Virus record (IMG/VR): IMGVR_UViG_3300043410_001892
Span: 62,001 to 126,000 of that record
DNA: 64,000 nucleotides
Direction: 5' to 3' (one strand)
A model generated the notes under the pieces. It was not told the origin of the DNA, did not search any database, and was given only the letters and a program-made list of their open reading frames with translations. Positions 16,124 to 59,868 of this stretch are shown one piece after another (position 1 is the first letter of the stretch; each line of letters opens with the position of its first letter). The position numbers and the translations under genes are program-made.

Positions 16124-17470
16124 TTACCATTTTACTAATTGTAAAATTCTTGCTAAACTATCTTCATTTCCAAATGATACATGATTGGTTGATTCGGATA
16201 CATGTCCAACGCCTGGCATTGTAGGTGGTGCAGCCGGAGGTGTAGGTTGTTGCATTTTTGAAATTTTCCACAAGCTATCACCTGGCTTAACTATGTATGT
16301 TGAACCATTTGGCATTTTTAATTGCTGTCCTGGATATATTTTATTTGGATTTTTACCAATTACTTGTTTGTTTAAATCGTAAATTTCTTTCCAGTTATGC
16401 GATGTTTTGTTAGCTGCAGGTACTGCTGCAGTTGGTGCAGGATGCGCTGCTAATACTCGTTTAACTACTTCATTAGGTGATGGATCAGCATTAGGATTAT
16501 CTAATTCCATTGATAATGCTGCGTATGCATCTTCGGAACTCATACCAGTACCTGTGATAATTTGTTGAATAGCATCGTTCCATATATTACTTGCATCAGT
16601 AGTAGGTTTAGCACCTGCACCAGTTTCGTCACTGCCATCAATTCCAATTACTGCACCTGATTGAGGTGGAGTTCCAGTTTGTACAGGTGTGCTAGGCGAA
16701 ACAATTGGAGCTGGTGTTTCTGGAGGAGTTACATACTTATCAGGTGTTACTGGTCCATTTTGCACAGGTGTACTAGGTGAAACGATTGGAGCTGGTGGTT
16801 CTGAAGGAGTTACATACTTATTAGATGCTTCTGGTTTGTCTGCTGGTAACACAAAGTTATCAGGAGCCCCGTACTCTTGTATTAGACTATTTAATGAATT
16901 GATTGATTCGAAAAGTGTTTGTTCATTATGTTTTTTCATTTTGTTTTCCTGTATATTTTCAGCAACTTTATCAAACGGTGAAAGCGTTATTTGCCGAGGA
17001 CCGTTAGGTGTTCGTATAATTTCTCTTGGCCAATCACGTCTTGGATTCATTACCTCAGCAGGAGACTTTGTTGCTGAATCCTGACTAAAATGTGGATTAT
17101 CAAAGTAATCATAAGAAAATGCATCACCTGGTTTTACTCTAATCTCGTTTTTATCTTTAGGAGGCGGAGTGTTAGGCGGGCGTGTCCATTCGTAGTTAGG
17201 TCGTGAAACATCTTTTGGAGAATTAGGATTTACTTGATTCCATAACTTATCTTGCTGTAATGCAGAACGTGGACCAATGCTGCCAGGTGGGACTGTAGAT
17301 CTATACGAATTAGGTGGTTGACTTTGAGGATTTGGTTTTCCTTGCATCTGTTGATCTAACTCGTCTTGAGTTCCATATCTAACCGGCTGAACATCAGCTT
17401 CAATTAGTTTAATCGTTTCTTTTAATGATTTAACGGAATCTTGAAGTGTTATTTTTGTAATTTCTTTCAT
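16124..17470 (-). CDS. Pro-rich protein with C-terminal circularly permuted LysM domain
   Basis: WKEIYDLNKQVIGKNPNKIYPGQQLKMP-NGS-TYIVKPGDSLWKISK. Confidence 0.75.
   Translation of the reverse strand: MKEITKITLQDSVKSLKETIKLIEADVQPVRYGTQDELDQQMQGKPNPQSQPPNSYRSTVPPGSIGPRSALQQDKLWNQVNPNSPKDVSRPNYEWTRPPNTPPPKDKNEIRVKPGDAFSYDYFDNPHFSQDSATKSPAEVMNPRRDWPREIIRTPNGPRQITLSPFDKVAENIQENKMKKHNEQTLFESINSLNSLIQEYGAPDNFVLPADKPEASNKYVTPSEPPAPIVSPSTPVQNGPVTPDKYVTPPETPAPIVSPSTPVQTGTPPQSGAVIGIDGSDETGAGAKPTTDASNIWNDAIQQIITGTGMSSEDAYAALSMELDNPNADPSPNEVVKRVLAAHPAPTAAVPAANKTSHNWKEIYDLNKQVIGKNPNKIYPGQQLKMPNGSTYIVKPGDSLWKISKMQQPTPPAAPPTMPGVGHVSESTNHVSFGNEDSLARILQLVKW
16677..16822 (-). repeat. Two copies of an 81-bp (27-aa) coding repeat
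   Basis: KYVTPSEPPAPIVSPSTPVQ / KYVTPPETPAPIVSPSTPVQ; anchors at 16698 and 16779. Confidence 0.85.
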
Positions 17471-19829
17471 AGTTGTTTCTCATAGTTCTACGAGCTTTGT
17501 GTTTATCAATACTACTTAATTTGTATCTTTTACCAAACCCGTACAATTCTTTCATCAATAACTCGATAGATTTTCCATCATCCATTTCGTCTGGATTATG
17601 TTCATCGGTATTACCAACACCTGCTAATCTCATTATATCTGAATGTTCGCTGTCAGCATCTTCACTCGGATCTAACTGACTAACTTTTTTCATTACATAT
17701 CTAACATCATCTTCTGATACACTGCTGTCGTATTCGTTATCATCAAAATTCTTTTTAATAATAGTTTTAACACGAGTTCCGCCAATTGTGAAATTCTTTT
17801 CTTCGTTATTCCAAAAACCTTCAATTGAATCTAAGATTTGTTGAATACCTGATTTTTCAGTTTCTTTAGAATCATCAATCTCTTCATATCCAACTTCATC
17901 CGGAGTCATACCTGATTCTCTAATAAGATCACGTATAGTCATACCTTCTGCAATTTTAGTATCAAGTTTTGCACCTGCAGCTTTAGCTTTAATGAATTTA
18001 GCTTTCATTTTATTTTTCTTATGCTGCATGCCTTCATTTACTTGTGTAGGTTGTTCATAAACTATTTTTGGTTCAATGTGTTCAACTTCAACTTGTTCAG
18101 ATTCAACTTCATCTTCGCCTAATAATCCAGCAAGTTTACGGTATCTTTTTAATTCTTCTTTTACTGGTTCAGCTGGAGCTTCTGCTGGAGCTTCAGGTGT
18201 TTCTGCTGCTGCCGGACCTGCTGGAGCTGCACCTGGCGCTGCGCCTGGGGGAGGTAATTCACCCTCTGCACCTGGTTCACCTTCTGGTGGTGTTTCGTCG
18301 CCGCCTAACGGTGGCATACCGCCGCCTCCGCCTAATGCAGGTAACCCGCCAGCACCTGCTGTTGAATCAGGTGGCATATCACTTGGCTCAGAAGAGTCTA
18401 ATGGTTCACCACTATTTGCATCTGGGGGTAAGTCTTGTCCACCAATTTCTTGAGGTGTTTCAATATATAGATTTGGTAATGCTTCAAGGTCTTTTGCATT
18501 ATGACCTTTGATATAATCAGCAATAATATCACGAACTGCTTTATCTTCTGCGTATGAGTCTTGATAATCAATATTTCGAATTAGTTCAACTATGTGTTTG
18601 TCGTCAATTAACCCTTTTAATGCTAATACTCCAGTTGTTCCACCGTTCATATTATTTTTAAGACGATCATTTAATCTTTCTAATGCTGGTCCTTTATTTG
18701 GACCTGTTATTTCATTTTTATCTTCTGAAACAATAGATTCAAGCATATCTTCAATTTCAAGTTCAGGGGCACGATATTTAATTGTCTTAGTTTCTGATGT
18801 AACAGTAGTATCAGTTTTAATTCTACCCATTAAATCTTTTGCAGATAATTTACGAACTGGTAAATCACTTTCGTGTACAATGTTGTACAAGAATGGAAAT
18901 ACTGCTTTCATATCTTCATTAAATGTACGAATTGTTAAACGATCAATCCAATCGTTCATAACTGTTTCTGGTACTTTAAGTTCTTCAGCTGCAATAAATG
19001 ATTCTGCAAATTGTTCATAATATGCAGGGCGTTGCAGATTTTGTATTTCTTTTTTAACTTCATCAATACGATCAATTACTTGATTAGTAATTGAACCCAT
19101 TGCTTCTGATATTTGTGTTTGTCTACCAACGTATCCTTTAAATTTACGAAGGCTATTTAATTCTTCACTTAACTTAGTAATGTATTTTCCAATCTCGTCA
19201 TATGGGTTGCCACCATGATTGACATGTTCAGCTAATGCACGAGCACCGGATAAATGTTTATAGGGATATTTAAATCTTTCACCGTCTGCATTTTCAATAT
19301 AAATGCTTGAAATATGCATGGTTCTCCCTGCAGCTAAGTCTGGATTGATAGGTTGGCTATGTTTAACAACTAAACGTGCTTCTCCTAAATTTTGGTAACT
19401 CAATCGTGAAGTACCAAACATTTTATTTTCCATAACTGGTTCCTTATGTTTTGACTGAAATTCGTAGTCGCGTTTGTCTAAGTTGCTCTTTCCAATATTT
19501 TGCACATCAAAATTTAACAATCTACTTTTAGCAAACTGTCTAAATGAACGTATAAACTTATACGCTTTTTTGTGAGAGGCTTTGTGATCATCGTCAACGA
19601 TATCTCCGCTAACTTGAACTACAACACCATCGTCTTGGTCTAATGTAATAGTAATAGTTCCAATTGGTTCACCGTCCTCGGTGTAGTCAAATTCAAAGAA
19701 TCTGGCCTTTGGAATATCAACTTTTTTAGTTAAGACATCTGCGTTTTCGTCACCGATATTTATGTCAGTGAATCGTGTTTGTATTTTGCCATAAAGGTCT
19801 GAAGCGATTTTATCTAAATTATTGTCCAT
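17430..19829 (-). CDS. Large acidic protein, putative prohead core/internal protein
   Basis: Follows the terminase gene; GATAAATA at 19835-19842; acidic, with a P/G/A-rich linker and many L/I-x-E sites; function inferred from context. Confidence 0.55.
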   Translation of the reverse strand: MDNNLDKIASDLYGKIQTRFTDINIGDENADVLTKKVDIPKARFFEFDYTEDGEPIGTITITLDQDDGVVVQVSGDIVDDDHKASHKKAYKFIRSFRQFAKSRLLNFDVQNIGKSNLDKRDYEFQSKHKEPVMENKMFGTSRLSYQNLGEARLVVKHSQPINPDLAAGRTMHISSIYIENADGERFKYPYKHLSGARALAEHVNHGGNPYDEIGKYITKLSEELNSLRKFKGYVGRQTQISEAMGSITNQVIDRIDEVKKEIQNLQRPAYYEQFAESFIAAEELKVPETVMNDWIDRLTIRTFNEDMKAVFPFLYNIVHESDLPVRKLSAKDLMGRIKTDTTVTSETKTIKYRAPELEIEDMLESIVSEDKNEITGPNKGPALERLNDRLKNNMNGGTTGVLALKGLIDDKHIVELIRNIDYQDSYAEDKAVRDIIADYIKGHNAKDLEALPNLYIETPQEIGGQDLPPDANSGEPLDSSEPSDMPPDSTAGAGGLPALGGGGGMPPLGGDETPPEGEPGAEGELPPPGAAPGAAPAGPAAAETPEAPAEAPAEPVKEELKRYRKLAGLLGEDEVESEQVEVEHIEPKIVYEQPTQVNEGMQHKKNKMKAKFIKAKAAGAKLDTKIAEGMTIRDLIRESGMTPDEVGYEEIDDSKETEKSGIQQILDSIEGFWNNEEKNFTIGGTRVKTIIKKNFDDNEYDSSVSEDDVRYVMKKVSQLDPSEDADSEHSDIMRLAGVGNTDEHNPDEMDDGKSIELLMKELYGFGKRYKLSSIDKHKARRTMRNNYERNYKNNTSRFR

Positions 19830-19840
19830 GTTTATATTTA

Positions 19841-21433
19841 TCACATATTAGAGGAAACAAATATTGGTAGAGGTGCTTCCCAGTCCTCTAAACGTTCTTC
19901 AATTCGCATTCTTTCAAATACCATAGGATCCCATTCTGCTAATACATCCGTCATACGTACAATAAGTAGTAATGCTGAAACTAAATCATCATGTTGTCCT
20001 GGTTTACCTTTAAAACTAATTCCATGTGCGATAAATGTTTTTAATTCACTTATAAGAGGTTTACTATAAATTTGCATTTTATCTTCTTCAATAAAATACT
20101 TTAACCTTGCACATGCCGCTAATTTAGAATTAAATGTAGTATTAAATCCTTTACGAAATTTACGAACATGCCCTTTTTTGCCCGGTTCACTTACGAAATA
20201 TCCCGGAAATGTATCTTCTCCTAAATTCTCAACAACTACTAAAGCACTTTCGCCTACAGTATTATTTTCAATTGACCAATATATTGAATTATATTGTTCA
20301 TATCCTAATTCATCTTGTATATATTTTAATACATCTCTTAACAATTTAACTTGACCTTGAATGGTAGTAATGTTATGATGCCATTCGCCAATTTGTTTTT
20401 GCGATGGTAATTCAAATATTGTAATAGCAGAATAGTCGCCGCCTGTACCTAAACTTGGATCTAATGCAACCAAATATAAATTACCAGGTTTAGGATGATT
20501 ATACCATCTAACTTGGCCTAATTTTGTTAATGGTTCTTTACCTACTATCTCTGCTAGTTTCATACTGCTAATAAGCGTTTCGTCATAGATTAAGAATTCA
20601 CAACCGTATTCACGTCTAAACATCTCTTCGCCAATACGACCTAACTCAGCTTTCTTCCATTCTTCATCGCGATCCGGGTGATCCCACCAATTAGAACGAA
20701 AACCAGAAAAGCCATTAATCCCAATCTTATCTGCTTTTTCATTACCAAATTCATCAAAAAATTGTTGGCTTTCTTTCCAGATAGTTGCAAATTGGTCTTC
20801 GTCACTGTTTGGTGTTGAAGTAATAATACAACGTCCACCAGTTGCTAATGTAGGGGAAATTGAAGTCCAAAACTCTTCAGCAATGTTAGGTTGTAAGAAT
20901 GCAAATTCGTCACAGTATAATAACGAAATAGCCATACCCCGTCCAGTTGTACCTGTAGTAGTTTGACTTACAATACGTGACCCATTATCAAATTCCATTG
21001 AACCCTTGTTATAACTGATTACACCTGCACGTAAAAAATCTGGACATAGTTCGTATCCATATCTAATACGTTGCATAATCTCCTGGGCACCTGTATATTT
21101 GTGTGCTGCAATTAGCACAGTTTGATCTGGGTGAAACATTGCATACCATAGTAAATATGACGATGCACAAGTTGTTTTACCAGATTGTCTTGGTAACATA
21201 TTGATATTAAATCGATATGAATTATAACAATTTAGTAAATCAACTTGGTAATCAAAAGGTTCAAATAATAATTTACCCTTTACTGCGTGTTGTATGTGAA
21301 AGAACTTTTTTGAAAAATGTAAATAACCAATGTCAGGGTCAGAACATAGTTGTAAATCAAGAATCTGTTCTTCACTAAATTTTTCAGTCTTGTGTGCTTT
21401 TTTAGTTAGAACACCTTCTAAACTTTTAGCCAT
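19841..21433 (-). CDS. gp17: Terminase large subunit
   Basis: LPRQSGKTT, LLYCDEFAF, ITSTPN, ALDPSLGTGGDYS and HDDLVSA. Confidence 0.97.
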   Translation of the reverse strand: MAKSLEGVLTKKAHKTEKFSEEQILDLQLCSDPDIGYLHFSKKFFHIQHAVKGKLLFEPFDYQVDLLNCYNSYRFNINMLPRQSGKTTCASSYLLWYAMFHPDQTVLIAAHKYTGAQEIMQRIRYGYELCPDFLRAGVISYNKGSMEFDNGSRIVSQTTTGTTGRGMAISLLYCDEFAFLQPNIAEEFWTSISPTLATGGRCIITSTPNSDEDQFATIWKESQQFFDEFGNEKADKIGINGFSGFRSNWWDHPDRDEEWKKAELGRIGEEMFRREYGCEFLIYDETLISSMKLAEIVGKEPLTKLGQVRWYNHPKPGNLYLVALDPSLGTGGDYSAITIFELPSQKQIGEWHHNITTIQGQVKLLRDVLKYIQDELGYEQYNSIYWSIENNTVGESALVVVENLGEDTFPGYFVSEPGKKGHVRKFRKGFNTTFNSKLAACARLKYFIEEDKMQIYSKPLISELKTFIAHGISFKGKPGQHDDLVSALLLIVRMTDVLAEWDPMVFERMRIEERLEDWEAPLPIFVSSNM

Positions 21434-21458
21434 AAATTCTCCTTTATTGTTTATTTAC

Positions 21459-21486
21459 AAAAAAAAGCGGACATATTGTCCGCTTT
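21459..21486 (-). terminator. Rho-independent terminator
   Basis: AAAGCGGACA-ata-TGTCCGCTTT on the minus strand, continuing into a T-run. Confidence 0.8.
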
Positions 21487-21490
21487 ATGA

Positions 21491-21793
21491 TTATACTGTA
21501 GGATCTTTAAATGTATCTCTAATTTCGTAATTTTTATTAGCCTGATCTGCATAATAGTTTGCTTTATGCCGAGCTTTATGATGTGCAGCTTTGTGTTCTG
21601 CAGTTCCTTTTACACCGCCAGCAAACACCATAAATGGAACATCAGTTCCTGGATTAAATAACCCAACATTTACAGTCTTACCTAAGTCACGTATTGCAGG
21701 ATGGACTTTATTTGCATCATCATAAGAAAAACCGCCACGTCCGCCGTAGACATGATCATGTTCTTCAGGACCGTGTATACGATTCTCTTTTAT
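21491..21793 (-). CDS. Unannotated 100-codon frame lacking ATG/GTG/TTG at its start; -1 extension of 21790..22284 or ATA-initiated gene
   Basis: IKENRIHGPEEHDHVYGGRGGFSYDD...EIRDTFKDPTV* fills the gap to the terminator; an in-frame TAA lies a few codons upstream of the A9 run. Confidence 0.6.
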   Translation of the reverse strand: MKENRIHGPEEHDHVYGGRGGFSYDDANKVHPAIRDLGKTVNVGLFNPGTDVPFMVFAGGVKGTAEHKAAHHKARHKANYYADQANKNYEIRDTFKDPTV

Positions 21794-22284
21794 CTTTTTT
21801 TTTGAGGACGAGCTTTAATATCTTCGTATAAAGAAGAAAGCTGATTTACTAACGATTCATGTTGTAATTTAAATGGATTTTCTCCACCGTTAGCTTTTAC
21901 TGCGCCACGGCCTTTACTTGCTAAATCGTCGCCTGTAAAAATAACAGAATCTAAACCATGAACTTTTGGTCCTTTATCGTTATGTTTTGCGTTTTTAAAA
22001 TCGTCGCCAATGACAATTTCATGTTCTTCGTCATCTGATGCCATTTCAGAATCGCTACCACTGATACCTTTTAAAATATCCATTAAATCGCGTATTCCGT
22101 CAACACCTTTACTACTGATTGAAATATTCATTTGTGTATCGCTAGATGAATTGTCACCTTGTATAACCATAGGTTCCATATCACCACCGCATTCTTCAAC
22201 ATCCATTTCAGCAGCTGATTCGATATCTAAATCACCGCCATCTTGAATCTCTTTTAATTTTCTTGCAAGTTCTGTAAAATTCAT
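21790..22284 (-). CDS. Acidic protein, putative prohead core component
   Basis: D/E-rich 164 aa in the head-gene cluster. Confidence 0.6.
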   Translation of the reverse strand: MNFTELARKLKEIQDGGDLDIESAAEMDVEECGGDMEPMVIQGDNSSSDTQMNISISSKGVDGIRDLMDILKGISGSDSEMASDDEEHEIVIGDDFKNAKHNDKGPKVHGLDSVIFTGDDLASKGRGAVKANGGENPFKLQHESLVNQLSSLYEDIKARPQKKR

Positions 22285-22901
22285 TATAATTTTCCTAAGT
22301 TAGCAGTTGGCAATTTAACTTGGCGAGATCCAATTGGACTTGTTGTTCCAACATTTGTACATACTGATGCCGGTTTTTCCGATGGTGATTTTTTAGCTAA
22401 TAATGAATCATTAACACCTGTATATTGATCGCCTTGAGTTTTAACTTTACCTAACTCTTTTAGCAATGACATAGTGTGAGCATCGCCTACTATTTTTTGG
22501 TTGTTTTCGTTTTCATAATCTTTTGTAAGTAATGATTCACCAGATGCAGTATTAAATTTGTTATTAAGATCAATTTCTTGTTCTTCTAACATACTACGAA
22601 CTTTGATGCAGCATTCTGACAAGCCCATAGTTTCGGCTGCCATTTGATGTATTTGAAAACTAGTTGCCGGATATCCTAAGACTACATCATAAACTGTAGC
22701 TGCAACATTTTTATGTGAAGGAAAATCAACTTGAGTTTCCTGTATTGGTGTACGTGTGCCTGAAGAAAATGATTCAACAGAGAACCTCGCTAATGCACCT
22801 TTAAGTTTATCGAGTTGGCAAGTAGTAAGTTCATCTATTACTTTAATTTTAAACTCGTACACTTGTTTTGATTCTAATAAGTATTGTTTAAATGATTTCA
22901 T
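22284..22901 (-). CDS. Putative internal head protein with capsid-targeting-like N-terminus
   Basis: MKSFKQYLLES resembles the T4 IPII/IPIII targeting peptide MKTYQEFIAE; AATAAATA at 22920-22927. Confidence 0.55.
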   Translation of the reverse strand: MKSFKQYLLESKQVYEFKIKVIDELTTCQLDKLKGALARFSVESFSSGTRTPIQETQVDFPSHKNVAATVYDVVLGYPATSFQIHQMAAETMGLSECCIKVRSMLEEQEIDLNNKFNTASGESLLTKDYENENNQKIVGDAHTMSLLKELGKVKTQGDQYTGVNDSLLAKKSPSEKPASVCTNVGTTSPIGSRQVKLPTANLGKL

Positions 22902-22922: not shown

Positions 22923-23402
22923 TTATTTCATATTCTTTAATTTTTCAATCAGACTATTTCGATCAGAAACAATAAATCCTTCACCAGAAATATTGATCCC
23001 AGGGTCTTCTGGATGGGCATCGTAATCTAGTTTTTGTTTCTTAAGTTGCAAATCGATCATTTTAAGTTTTTTATCTATTTTTGCAGCTTTTGCATCGATT
23101 GCATTTTTTAACATGCTTGATGCAACTTCAAAAATTCTGCCACTATATCTTGCTTCTACGTTCATACCTAAGTCCATTAGATCGTCGTAAGCATCAGTTG
23201 CGCGTTGTGCTAGTGCGTCAAATTCTGTATCGCTTACGTCACCTAAGCCTTTTACTTGCGGCAATGCTGCTGATATTTTATCAAATTCGGCCATATCACG
23301 AAATAACGGTACTGGATCAGTAGGTACAGTAGCAGGTTCTGCTTCTGATATTATTTTTTTATTTTCTGGTAAATTTAGAAGTTCTTCTAATTTGCGAGTC
23401 AT
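22923..23402 (-). CDS. Probable terminase small subunit (gp16-like)
   Basis: Helical core DLMDLGMNVEARYSGRIFEVASSMLKNA, coiled coil, and short C-terminal strand/helix FIVSDRNSLIEKL. Confidence 0.55.
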   Translation of the reverse strand: MTRKLEELLNLPENKKIISEAEPATVPTDPVPLFRDMAEFDKISAALPQVKGLGDVSDTEFDALAQRATDAYDDLMDLGMNVEARYSGRIFEVASSMLKNAIDAKAAKIDKKLKMIDLQLKKQKLDYDAHPEDPGINISGEGFIVSDRNSLIEKLKNMK

Positions 23403-23438: not shown

Positions 23439-23879
23439 TTATTTGGAACCATTATGAAAAATATCATTTTCATTAATGACTCTAAATACAAGACCATTTT
23501 GTTTACAATATGCAGAAGCAGCAGCCCATTTGGCTTGATTTTTAATAAATTGTGCTTGATTGTATTTGTTTTTTCCTACACGTTCTAATATTTGCTGACT
23601 TGCAGGTTTTATTTCAATCAATTCATTATGTATGTGATTATTTTTATCTACGTATTGAATAAAAAAATCAGGTAGATAAATGGTGTTACGATTAGTCAAT
23701 GGATCTCTATATGGAATAGTTACTGCTTCACTTGCCCATTTTTGTACTGCAGGGTTAGTATCGCACATGTGCATAAATGTCATTTCCCATGAACTTCTGT
23801 AATATGGTATTTTGGTTCCTATGTATTTGTCAGGGTGTTTAAATTTAAAAGACCCCTTGGCAAATTTTCTACTACTCAT
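23439..23879 (-). CDS. gp4: Head completion nuclease (T4 gp4-like, TnsA-type PD-(D/E)xK)
   Basis: KHPDKYIG, YRSSWE, WASE, YLPDF, IEIKP, NQAKWAAA. Confidence 0.9.
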   Translation of the reverse strand: MSSRKFAKGSFKFKHPDKYIGTKIPYYRSSWEMTFMHMCDTNPAVQKWASEAVTIPYRDPLTNRNTIYLPDFFIQYVDKNNHIHNELIEIKPASQQILERVGKNKYNQAQFIKNQAKWAAASAYCKQNGLVFRVINENDIFHNGSK

Positions 23880-59241: not shown

Positions 59242-59868
59242 CTATTGGAGTCCGTTTATTATATTTAATAAACTTTCTTTAAGGTATTTTTGCGCCTTTG
59301 GATCACCTCTTACCTCTTCCGCTAAACGAATTGAATTAAGACCACCTTTACTATTCATTAAGTGTTCGTAGATTGGGGTAGGATAAGCTCCTGGTGCACT
59401 TGGTTGAGCTACCATATCAACTGTGATAATCTCAAAATCTGATACTTCACCGGATCCGGAATCACTAACATTGCCAGATCCGCGTGAGCTAACGCCAAGT
59501 TTCACACCACTTTCTAACATGGTTTTAATTAGTTGACCCATTGGTGTTGGTAAAATTTTAAGTTTACCATAACCATTTGGACCTTCCATCCACATGTTAG
59601 TTATCATATGTGAAACTCGGTCTAAATTAATTTTTAGATCATCTGGGTGATCTACTTCTCCTAGTACAGAATAACCATTTTGAATTTGATCGTTGAGGGT
59701 CTTAACAGCCTTGCTAATCTCACTCACAGGGTACACACGTTGATTTGCGTTTCGGATGCCACCTTGTATACAGATACCGCTCATATACAAGTTTTTTCCT
59801 TCCTTATCGTCAGATTCAACGATCATTTGCGCTTCGTTGAAGCTAAGGTTTTCTCGGAGATGTAACAT
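59242..59868 (-). CDS. gp21: Prohead protease
   Basis: NANQRVYP, LGEVDHP, KLGVSSRGSG, DMVAQPSAPGA. Confidence 0.96.
   Translation of the reverse strand: MLHLRENLSFNEAQMIVESDDKEGKNLYMSGICIQGGIRNANQRVYPVSEISKAVKTLNDQIQNGYSVLGEVDHPDDLKINLDRVSHMITNMWMEGPNGYGKLKILPTPMGQLIKTMLESGVKLGVSSRGSGNVSDSGSGEVSDFEIITVDMVAQPSAPGAYPTPIYEHLMNSKGGLNSIRLAEEVRGDPKAQKYLKESLLNIINGLQ

What the first reader, a model, noticed from the sequence alone, without database searches (positions are those of the whole stretch)
21491..21812. Hidden 101-codon frame reachable by -1 slippage on an A9 run (or by an ATA start)
Seen on the minus strand: ...CCT CAA AAA AAA AGA TAA. The -1 frame (AAG ATA AAA GAG AAT...) is open for 101 codons up to the terminator, is closed by a TAA just upstream, and has no canonical start until codon 56. 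Known: A-rich heptamers support -1 ribosomal frameshifting, and A9 runs support transcriptional slippage. Inference: two isoforms of a head-core protein (164 and about 262 aa). The His-rich extension begins with IKE-N, which looks like a gp21 cleavage site. Alternatives: an ATGA overlap mutated to ATAA, ATA initiation, or a homopolymer assembly error.
Basis: partly seen in the sequence, partly recalled or inferred. Interest (0 to 1): 0.66.

Follow-up and report, generated by a model that had tools for sequence, protein, structure and literature searches.

The report
Conserved A9 slippage site extends phage protein
A run of nine adenines at the end of a jumbo-phage packaging-module gene is a conserved recoding signal that most likely lets some transcripts or ribosomes shift into the -1 frame and add a 101-residue tail, and the same phage clade uses the same signal at a second gene.

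Summary
The 164-codon gene (21790-22284, minus strand) ends CAA AAA AAA AGA TAA, with A9 at 21795-21803. The -1 frame is open for 101 codons from the run to 21491, and its first ATG or GTG is at codon 56. The frame shows the genome's coding signature and is under purifying selection (omega 0.17-0.46). Nine diverged lineages of uncultured jumbo phages keep the same layout: C-A9-GATAA (once A11), a homologous 76-119-codon ORF always in frame -1, no conserved start codon (none at all in one lineage), and a junction K-I-x-E conserved at protein level. Relatives without the extension also lack the A-run. A second gene of the same genome has the same layout (TCA-A9-G-TAA, junction K-[VI]-x-E) in 79 of 80 relatives. 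There the codon after the run is mostly GTA, which argues against ATA initiation. Best explanation: programmed -1 recoding giving a 164-aa product and a 264-aa product. RNA-polymerase slippage on A9 is favoured over purely ribosomal -1 frameshifting. No transcript, read or peptide evidence could be obtained. It is a new variant of a known kind of recoding. The functions of both protein parts are unknown, and the "head-core" label is unproven.

The parts
21790..22284 (-). Upstream gene, 0-frame product of 164 aa. It is acidic (pI 4.55), mostly disordered with three short helices, and ends ...LYEDIKARPQKKR*.
   Evidence: ORF list. Family of 71 IMG/VR loci. No Pfam or PHROG hit. AF2 mean pLDDT 58 with helices 2-13, 61-73 and 136-156. 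pI.
21795..21803 (-). A9 run (T9 on the + strand), the proposed slippage site. In the 0 frame it reads C-AA AAA AAA A-GA, which contains the heptamer A_AAA_AAA.
   Evidence: C-A9-GATAA/G is conserved in 8 other lineages, and L036 has A11 through a G-to-A change. The chance of keeping the run is 0.27 per lineage even if the residues QKKR are fixed.
21790..21792 (-). 0-frame stop TAA, one codon after the run. It overlaps the -1-frame Ile codon ATA (21791-21793).
   Evidence: The position is conserved in all A-run lineages.
21491..21796 (-). -1-frame extension of 101 codons plus stop. It comprises the junction K-I-K-E, a disordered His/Gly-rich linker (EHDHVYGGRGGF...) and a beta-beta-alpha-beta domain of about 60 residues. 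It is basic (pI 8.9).
   Evidence: Coding score. Homologues P0003-P0005 and the loci. HMM hits are always in frame -1. Omega is 0.17-0.46. AF2 gives pLDDT 82-90 for residues 40-100.
21785..21796 (-). Junction motif K-I-K-E (AAG ATA AAA GAG). It fits the [IV]-x-E pattern of a candidate prohead-protease cleavage site.
   Evidence: K1, I2 and E4 are invariant columns of alignment A4, though for L013 (KINWHDEE) the E column is matched only through an alignment gap. The E is encoded by both GAA and GAG. The same motif occurs at the second site in 53 of 54 distinct sequences.
21464..21486 (-). Intrinsic terminator (10-pair stem plus T8) closing the transcription unit after the extension. It is nearly identical in relatives, where it directly follows the upstream gene when the extension is absent.
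19841..21433 (-). Large terminase subunit (530 aa), the next gene downstream. It anchors the locus in the head and packaging module.
   Evidence: PF03237/PF17289 and phrog_36964. It is 53% identical to the PA5oct TerL.
59371..59835 (-). T4 gp21-type prohead core protease (Peptidase_S77). It is the enzyme that could cut at the junction motif.
   Evidence: PF03420 match at G000:C1:121371-121835 (-), 88.5 bits, above the family cut-off. Window coordinate = genome coordinate minus 62000.

Best explanation
The A9 run is a programmed -1 recoding site. Most expression ends at the TAA and gives the 164-aa acidic, disordered protein. In a fraction of events the reading frame moves to -1 inside the run. 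The result is a 264-aa fusion: residues 1-163 of the upstream protein, then K-I-K-E and the 101-residue extension ending in a small beta-beta-alpha-beta domain.

Two routes give the same protein. In the first, RNA polymerase slips on the nine-base homopolymer and adds one A to the mRNA. In the second, ribosomes make a -1 tandem slip on A_AAA_AAA. I favour polymerase slippage as the main route, about 60:40.

What is shown: the anatomy, its conservation, coding selection on the extension, the absence of any conserved start, and the joint gain or loss of run and extension. What is inferred: that the shift happens, its route and its efficiency.

A further inference at lower confidence concerns the conserved [IV]-x-E just after the junction. 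It may be a cleavage site for the phage's gp21-type prohead protease. In that case the upstream protein would carry the extension into the prohead, where the extension would be released.
For: 1. Anatomy is confirmed.

2. The extension is a real coding sequence. It scores +55 nats in its own phase. It has homologues at 37-49% identity. Omega is 0.17-0.46 in eight pairs with pS 0.46-0.70. AF2 predicts a confident domain.

3. Coupling to the upstream gene:
- In nine lineages the upstream gene ends C-A9-GATAA/G, or C-A11-TAA in one (window/L008, L009, L013, L014=L018, L016, L017, L026, L036, L037).
- In all nine the homologous ORF starts at the run, always in frame -1.
- No in-frame, differently phased or free-standing copy was found in IMG/VR.

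4. No start codon is available.
- The first ATG, GTG or TTG lies at codon 14, 20, 34, 42, 56 or 75, and L016 has none.
- The GTG that gene callers used in relatives is GTC in the window.
- Residues upstream of it (EHDHVY and K-I-x-E) are conserved through synonymous changes.
- The -1 frame is closed 3-4 codons upstream of the run.

5. The five relatives in the same clade that lack the extension also lack the run. Their gene stop sits next to the same terminator.

6. The terminator lies after the extension, so both frames are on one transcript.

7. A sister site exists. A second gene of the same genome ends TCA-A9-G-TAG with a 109-codon -1 ORF. In 79 of 80 relatives this is TCA-A9-G-TAA/G or A10-TAA followed by 105-123 codons. 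The junction is K-[VI]-x-E, and the second -1 codon is GTA in 45 of 54 distinct sequences.

8. Reasons to favour polymerase slippage:
- Run length is always 9 or more, but its codon phase differs between the two sites.
- Bases outside the ribosomal heptamer are invariant: the third base of TCA in 54 of 54 sequences although TCA is only 37% of Ser codons, and CAA in all ten site-1 sequences.
- No conserved downstream RNA structure exists.
- Bacterial RNA polymerase slips efficiently on runs of 9 A or T, and the RNA-DNA hybrid is 9-10 bp (PMC5009743).

9. Protease idea: a Peptidase_S77 gene is present. T4, phiKZ and SPN3US prohead proteases cut after Glu in x-X-E motifs (PMC5694885).
Against: - There is no direct evidence of expression. 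No RNA or DNA reads could be laid, there are no peptides, and no cultured member of the clade exists.
- No relative carries the two parts fused in one frame, which would be the classic corroboration of a trans-frame product.
- A_AAA_AAA is a weaker ribosomal shift site than A_AAA_AAG, and no stimulator was found, so ribosomal efficiency could be low.
- The polymerase that transcribes these genes and its slippage behaviour are unknown.
- The lineages are related, so conservation counts are not independent.
- ATA is present after the run in every site-1 lineage, so ATA-dependent initiation cannot be excluded from site 1 alone.
- L013 lacks I-x-E at the junction.
Confidence: 0.8

Rival explanations
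1. The extension is a separate small protein. It would be initiated at the ATA that overlaps the stop (ATAA in place of ATGA), either by non-canonical initiation on an A-rich leader or by termination-reinitiation.
For: ATA follows the run in all ten site-1 sequences. ATGA/TAATG overlaps are used elsewhere in this operon, for example at 22284. A-rich leaders can favour initiation without a Shine-Dalgarno sequence (general knowledge).
Against: - ATA is forced by the 0-frame A + TAA/TAG, so its conservation is not independent evidence.
- A single A-to-G change would create a canonical ATGA overlap while keeping a stop for the upstream gene. None of nine lineages has it, despite near-saturated synonymous divergence.
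- No Shine-Dalgarno-like sequence precedes the ATA.
- At the sister site the equivalent codon is GTA, which is not a start codon, in 45 of 54 distinct sequences.
- This model does not explain why the run is exactly 9 or more and invariant.
Confidence: 0.06
2. The switch is at the DNA level. Replication slippage makes the run vary between A9 and A10 in the phage population (phase variation). Some genomes would then encode the fused gene, and consensus assemblies would show A9.
For: Homopolymers of 9 are hypermutable in replication (general knowledge). No read-level data were available to exclude minority A10 genomes.
Against: Every one of more than ten independent consensus assemblies at site 1, and 54 distinct ones at site 2, shows the out-of-frame length. 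Length changes occur only by substitution, which preserves the frame relation. A lytic jumbo phage gains little from heritable on/off states of a virion-module protein. A fixed product ratio is the usual reason for recoding in structural genes (PMC5009743).
Confidence: 0.07
3. Assembly or sequencing artefact: the true run is A10 and the gene is a plain 264-codon ORF.
For: Homopolymers are the classic site of length errors. The window and L001 could derive from the same data.
Against: A9 is found in assemblies from different projects and assemblers: IMG/VR, Logan ERR14949506-09 and SRR21620666, and an ENA MEGAHIT contig. It is also found at the second site in 79 of 80 contigs. A systematic one-base under-call at every one of these is not credible.
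Confidence: 0.03
4. The frame is a decaying remnant of a once independent gene that lost its start. It is not expressed, or only the 46-aa ORF from codon 56 is made.
For: The window has no canonical start before codon 56. Gene callers annotate only a 46-aa ORF (P0002). Five related lineages have lost the segment altogether.
Against: The frame is intact in all nine lineages. Omega is 0.17-0.46, including residues upstream of codon 56. There are no indels or stops between the window and the 98% identical variant. Codon usage is fully gene-like. The predicted domain spans codon 56, so the 46-aa piece would be half a domain.
Confidence: 0.03

Closest known systems
Thermus thermophilus dnaX (transcriptional slippage on a run of nine A/T giving tau and gamma)
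   Same: Both have a homopolymer of exactly nine, the length of the RNA-DNA hybrid, inside a coding region. Both give two products with a common N-terminus, need no RNA structure, and have nearby stops in the alternative frames (PMC5009743).
   Different: In dnaX the long product is the 0-frame one and slippage truncates it. Here the 0 frame stops right after the run and slippage extends the protein by a folded domain. The gene here is a phage virion-module gene, not a replication gene. Slippage here is not shown experimentally.
E. coli dnaX and IS-element -1 ribosomal frameshifting on A_AAA_AAG / A_AAA_AAA
   Same: An all-A slippery heptamer lies in the 0 frame. The sister site even has A_AAA_AAG followed directly by a stop.
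   Different: There is no upstream Shine-Dalgarno-like stimulator and no conserved downstream hairpin or pseudoknot. Conservation extends to A's outside the heptamer.
Phage structural proteins with a C-terminal domain added by frameshifting (T7 10A/10B, T3 and Lactobacillus A2 coat proteins with Ig-like domains, lambda G/GT)
   Same: A minor, longer isoform of a morphogenesis-module protein is made by a -1 shift near the end of the gene, with a fixed ratio of short to long forms (PMC5009743). Distant relatives carry other C-terminal modules in frame. This fits the 'domains land in or out of frame' picture.
   Different: - The shift signal is a 9-nt homopolymer, not a heptamer with a structure.
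- The added domain is not Ig-like and has no fold match.
- The carrier is a disordered acidic protein of unknown role, not a coat protein or a tail chaperone.
- Two genes per genome use the same signal.
T4 capsid-targeting sequences and gp21 processing of internal proteins
   Same: A gp21-family protease is encoded. A hydrophobic-x-Glu motif sits exactly at the boundary between carrier and cargo, conserved at two independent junctions.
   Different: In T4 the targeting peptide is a 10-20-residue N-terminal leader in the same frame. Here the putative carrier is a whole protein joined by recoding. Cleavage and head location are untested.
Potyvirus P3N-PIPO and paramyxovirus P/V editing (polymerase slippage on short A-runs)
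   Same: A trans-frame fusion arises from polymerase stuttering on an A-run and yields a set minority product.
   Different: Those are RNA-virus polymerases acting on GA6-type motifs. This is a DNA phage transcribed by a DNA-dependent RNA polymerase.

Membership tests
Programmed transcriptional slippage sites (A9/T9 type) | Homopolymer of about 9 or more A or T in the sense strand within a coding region | tested here: met
   A9 at 21795-21803. All relatives with the extension have A9 or A11.
Programmed transcriptional slippage sites (A9/T9 type) | Run conserved at nucleotide level beyond what the encoded residues require, independent of codon phase | tested here: met
   The chance of keeping the run is 0.27 per lineage with QKKR fixed. 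At the sister site TCA-A9 is found in 54 of 54 distinct sequences, although TCA is 37% of Ser codons. The run starts at codon position 2 at site 1 and at position 3 at site 2.
Programmed transcriptional slippage sites (A9/T9 type) | A conserved ORF lies in the frame reached by adding one base | tested here: met
Programmed transcriptional slippage sites (A9/T9 type) | The mRNA population is heterogeneous in run length while the DNA is uniform | not testable with these tools
-1 programmed ribosomal frameshifting (X_XXY_YYZ with stimulator) | Slippery heptamer in the 0 frame | tested here: met
   A_AAA_AAA at site 1. A_AAA_AAG at the sister site.
-1 programmed ribosomal frameshifting (X_XXY_YYZ with stimulator) | Conserved 3' stem-loop or pseudoknot, or a 5' Shine-Dalgarno-like stimulator | tested here: not met
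   Folds of the 70 nt after the run in ten lineages share no structure, with z-scores from -2.3 to +0.9. No GGAGG-like element occurs in the 36 nt upstream.
Frameshift-appended C-terminal domains of phage structural proteins | The carrier is a virion or morphogenesis protein | tested here: inconclusive
   The gene lies between a TerS-like gene, a phrog_14802 'virion structural protein' and TerL. The PA5oct genes at the same position are MS-detected structural proteins, but they show no detectable homology.
Frameshift-appended C-terminal domains of phage structural proteins | The appended part is an Ig-like domain | tested here: not met
   AF2 gives a beta-beta-alpha-beta domain. There is no PDB fold match at E<=0.001. 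The weak sequence hits to Big_3_5 and DUF11 repeat proteins (E about 1e-6) cover only 34-51 residues.
Substrates of T4 gp21-type prohead protease | A Peptidase_S77 protease is encoded by the phage | tested here: met
   PF03420, 88.5 bits, at window 59371-59835.
Substrates of T4 gp21-type prohead protease | A conserved hydrophobic-x-Glu motif lies at a domain boundary | tested here: met
   K-I-x-E follows the run in 8 of 9 site-1 lineages; L013 is the exception. [ILV]-x-E occurs within 9 residues in 53 of 54 site-2 sequences and is kept when displaced by one codon.
Substrates of T4 gp21-type prohead protease | Cleavage after the Glu is observed, and the product is in the head | not testable with these tools
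   This needs virion mass spectrometry.
Overlapping-gene coupling with a start codon over the stop (ATGA/TAATG type) or ATA initiation | A start-capable codon is conserved at the overlap | tested here: not met
   ATA is never ATG at site 1. At the architecturally identical sister site the codon is GTA in 45 of 54 sequences.

The most novel reading that the evidence does not exclude
A whole clade of uncultured freshwater-type jumbo phages uses a fixed 'A9 + stop' cassette as a stoichiometry-setting loader. RNA-polymerase slippage would fuse a small cargo domain to an abundant disordered prohead protein in a set minority of molecules. The fusion would be built into the prohead, and the gp21-type protease would then cut at the [IV]-x-E placed directly after the junction and free the cargo inside the capsid. 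That would be a trans-frame version of the T4 capsid-targeting sequence, used at two or more genes per genome.
Probability: 0.25. Interest if true: 0.8.

Novelty: new variant of a known kind. Interest (0 to 1): 0.62.

Why it matters
Gene callers miss the extension entirely in this genome. They call a 46-aa fragment here and GTG-started fragments in relatives. The true proteome of this jumbo-phage clade therefore contains at least two unannotated trans-frame proteins per genome.

The case is unusually clean. A nine-base homopolymer next to a stop is conserved across dozens of diverged genomes at two unrelated genes, with the run in different codon phases. That makes it a good natural system for separating polymerase slippage from ribosomal frameshifting in phage late expression.

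If the junction motif is a prohead-protease site, the arrangement would show a new way of delivering a fixed small dose of a protein into a capsid. It also gives a simple search rule for other phage genomes: A9 or longer at an ORF end, followed by an open -1 frame.

Tried and rejected
- **Phage collection:** megablast and tblastn of the region, the extension and the 164-aa protein found nothing. The clade has no cultured relative. The nearest TerL is PA5oct at 53% identity.
- **Family scans:** Pfam and PHROGs gave no hit for either part.
- **Word-index protein search** with the extension found nothing. Only the exhaustive search found the family.
- **Metagenome-contig scans** with P0001 and with alignment A6 found nothing.
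- **Alignment A4** was too diverged for pattern scanning.
- **Viral-contig scan with A6** returned only loci already known.
- **PA5oct gp281**, the positional counterpart, shows no similarity by BLASTP or hhalign.
- **Fold and look-alike searches:** the PDB fold search of the extension model gave nothing at E<=0.001, and the ESM Atlas gave no usable hit.
- **Upstream protein model:** it is too disordered for a fold search.
- **Downstream RNA stimulator:** none is conserved. The hairpin at 21735-21755 is specific to the window lineage.
- **Ig-like leads:** the hits P0006 and P0007 are Big_3_5 and DUF11 repeat proteins. I rejected them as a weak, short resemblance.
- **Fused 264-aa product:** it was not folded or searched, because a -1 fusion has no reference form in these tools and I did not type it.
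- **Sinorhizobium phage Phosso**, a weak hit to the site-2 carrier, shows no comparable architecture in its annotation.
- **Literature:** searches found no description of A-run recoding in jumbo phages. This covers only the held library.
Full report
**Context.** The window is bases 62001-126000 of a 372,173-bp virus record with direct terminal repeats and 35.5% GC, a jumbo phage. On the minus strand the gene order is:
- a head-closure/TnsA-like gene (23439-23879);
- a TerS-like gene (22923-23402);
- a 205-aa gene with a weak 'virion structural protein' PHROG hit (22284-22901);
- the 164-aa gene (21790-22284);
- the hidden frame;
- a strong terminator (21464-21486);
- the large terminase (19841-21433);
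- an 804-aa structural-like protein.

The nearest cultured phage by TerL is Pseudomonas phage PA5oct at 53% identity, followed by Phosso and the Rak2-like phages CBB and XbC2. Neither the 164-aa protein nor the hidden frame has any match in 50,697 phage records.

- The 164-codon gene ends CAA AAA AAA AGA TAA, with nine A's at 21795-21803.
- The -1 frame reads AAG ATA AAA GAG AAT... and stays open for 101 codons to the TAA at 21491-21493.
- It is closed six codons upstream of the AAG by a TAA embedded in ATT AAA, so no upstream start can serve it.
- Its first ATG or GTG is at codon 56 or 57.
- A codon model trained on 194 long ORFs of the genome prefers this phase over the other two by 55 and 71 nats.

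**The frame encodes a conserved protein.** The word-index search found nothing. The exhaustive search found three proteins of 86-100 aa at 37-49% identity, plus the 46-aa fragment called in a near-identical contig. Their contigs are syntenic with the window: TerS-like gene, about 208-aa gene, 162-172-aa homologue of the upstream gene, small ORF, the same terminator, then TerL. The 'M' that begins each called protein is a GTG. It aligns with Val21 of the window frame, where the codon is GTC. Upstream of that GTG, the relatives' -1 frame is open back to the run. It encodes the same residues as the window (K-I-x-E-N and E-H-D-H-V-Y) through synonymous differences. The called starts are therefore artefacts of gene calling.

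**A wider, unbiased sample.** I scanned IMG/VR with an alignment of the upstream protein and obtained 71 loci. I classified each by its 3' end.
- Every locus whose gene ends in a run of 9 or more A's has a 76-119-codon ORF beginning at the run. The tail is C-A9-GATAA, once GATAG, and once C-A11-TAA through a G-to-A change.
- An HMM of the extension hits all of these at E 1e-19 to 1e-45, and always in frame -1.
- No locus without a run has the domain in any frame.
- No in-frame fusion or independently phased copy exists. A further IMG/VR scan with the extension family returned only these same places.

With the Logan and ENA contigs this makes nine lineages. The first canonical start codon in the extension ORF lies at codon 14, 20, 34, 42, 56 or 75, and one lineage (L016) has none in 106 codons. 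Pairwise omega over the extension is 0.17-0.46 with pS 0.46-0.70. The 98% identical variant from the same sample differs by five synonymous and five non-synonymous changes and no indel.

On a tree of the upstream protein, all A-run rows fall in one clade of 15 rows (support 95/84). Five rows in that clade lack both the run and the extension. This fits one gain and three or four joint losses. In those five the stop is followed within about 20-30 nt by the same terminator. Given QKKR as fixed residues, the genome's codon usage would keep an unbroken run with probability 0.27 per independent lineage.

**A second site settles the main ambiguity.** I listed all A8 and longer runs in the genome and found another A9 at an ORF end, at G000:C1:331363-331371 on the minus strand, outside the window. 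There a 329-aa protein with a weak 'virion structural protein' PHROG hit ends TCA AAA AAA AAG TAG. The -1 frame then runs 109 codons. Of 524 ORFs of 80 aa or more, only these two end with A9 or longer, and both have the long -1 ORF.

In 79 of 80 IMG/VR relatives of that protein (43-74% identity), the tail is TCA-A9-G-TAA/TAG or TCA-A10-TAA. A 105-123-codon -1 ORF follows, with junction K-[VI]-x-E-...-D-P-L. Among 54 distinct sequences:
- the codon after the run is GTA in 45 and ATA in 9;
- [ILV]-x-E lies within the first nine residues in 53, and is kept even when displaced by a codon;
- the first canonical start is scattered from codon 3 to codon 96.

GTA cannot initiate translation. For this architecture, ATA initiation or an 'ATGA gone to ATAA' overlap is therefore not the general mechanism.

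**Mechanism.** Both known routes produce the same 264-aa protein: residues 1-163, then K-I-K-E and the rest of the extension. I favour RNA-polymerase slippage for four reasons.
- The conserved quantity is a length of 9 or more. This matches the 9-10-bp RNA-DNA hybrid and the run length at which bacterial polymerase slips efficiently (PMC5009743).
- The run sits in different codon phases at the two sites.
- Positions outside the ribosomal heptamer are invariant: the third base of TCA in 54 of 54 sequences although TCA is only 37% of Ser codons, and CAA in all ten site-1 sequences.
- No downstream structure or upstream Shine-Dalgarno-like element is conserved.

Ribosomal -1 slippage on A_AAA_AAA, or on A_AAA_AAG plus stop at the sister site, may well contribute. 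Sequence alone cannot apportion the two routes. The terminator placed after the extension shows that both frames lie on one transcript.

**What the parts are.**
- *Upstream protein.* It is acidic (pI 4.55). AF2 predicts mostly disorder with three short helices (mean pLDDT 58). Distant relatives carry unrelated in-frame C-terminal modules after the conserved ...LYE-IK-R end, and one lineage (L037) has such a module, then the A9 site, then the -1 extension. The C-terminus thus seems to be a docking point for extra modules.
- *Extension.* It is basic (pI 8.9). It has a disordered His/Gly-rich linker that is absent in three short-form lineages. Its confident beta-beta-alpha-beta domain of about 60 residues (pLDDT 82-90) has no PDB fold match or Atlas look-alike.
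- *'Head-core' label.* It rests only on position. The PA5oct genes at the same place are MS-detected structural proteins but are not detectably homologous.
- *Protease idea.* A T4 gp21-type protease gene lies at window 59371-59835. Proteases of this family cut after Glu in x-X-E motifs (PMC5694885).

**Limits.** The lineages share ancestry, so the counts overstate independence. The fused product was not modelled, because it has no reference form in these tools. Literature searches of the held library found no report of this arrangement in jumbo phages. That does not prove it is undescribed.

**Verdict.** It is a conserved programmed -1 recoding site of the A9 type and a new variant of known mechanisms. 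Three things make it notable: it is used twice per genome, it is conserved across a large uncultured jumbo-phage clade, and a protease-like motif sits at both junctions.

Noticed in passing
G000:C1:331363-331371 (minus strand; locus L088:637-1958), outside the window: A second A9 recoding site lies in the same genome. A 329-aa structural-like protein ends TCA-A9-G-TAG and is followed by a 109-codon -1 ORF. The layout is conserved in 79 of 80 IMG/VR relatives, with junction K-[VI]-x-E...DPL.
   Followed up: yes
window 21451-21490 (minus strand) and the same place in L003-L006, L009, L013, L014, L019, L021, L029: The stretch TCATAAAGCGGACA-TATGTCCGC-T8-GTAAATA before TerL is almost identical at nucleotide level in relatives whose flanking proteins are only 45-50% identical. 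The TGTAAATA after the terminator resembles a T4-type late promoter (TATAAATA). This may be a conserved terminator-promoter unit.
   Followed up: no
L006:3535-5267: In one relative the TerL reading frame breaks off after 308 codons. A 264-aa ORF with a GIY-YIG-like N-terminus follows, and TerL similarity resumes about 1.2 kb later. This looks like a mobile intron or homing-endonuclease insertion in the terminase gene.
   Followed up: no
L029, L037, L044, L071, L072, L076, L082 (upstream-gene homologues): Distant homologues of the 164-aa protein carry unrelated in-frame C-terminal additions of 60-190 residues after the conserved ...LYE-IK-R end. L037 has an in-frame module, then the A9 site, then the -1 extension.
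   Followed up: partly
window 59371-59835 (minus strand): A T4 gp21-type prohead core protease (Peptidase_S77, 88.5 bits) is encoded in the window.
   Followed up: partly
window 17430-19844 (minus strand) and L088:963-1949: The 804-aa protein after TerL and the carrier protein of the second site both contain long Pro/Ala/Gly low-complexity stretches of the GGAPAPAPGG type.
   Followed up: no
G000:C1:189431-189439 and 200218-200226 (minus strand), outside the window: Two further A9 runs lie inside sense ORFs. One is 80 nt before the end of a 227-aa ORF and the other is in the middle of a 603-aa ORF. Neither has a long alternative frame behind it. They may be sites of unselected slippage.
   Followed up: partly
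window 21735-21755 (minus strand): A hairpin with a T-rich tail lies about 40 nt downstream of the A-run (z = -2.3). It is present in the window and weaker in its 98% variant, but absent in other lineages.
   Followed up: partly
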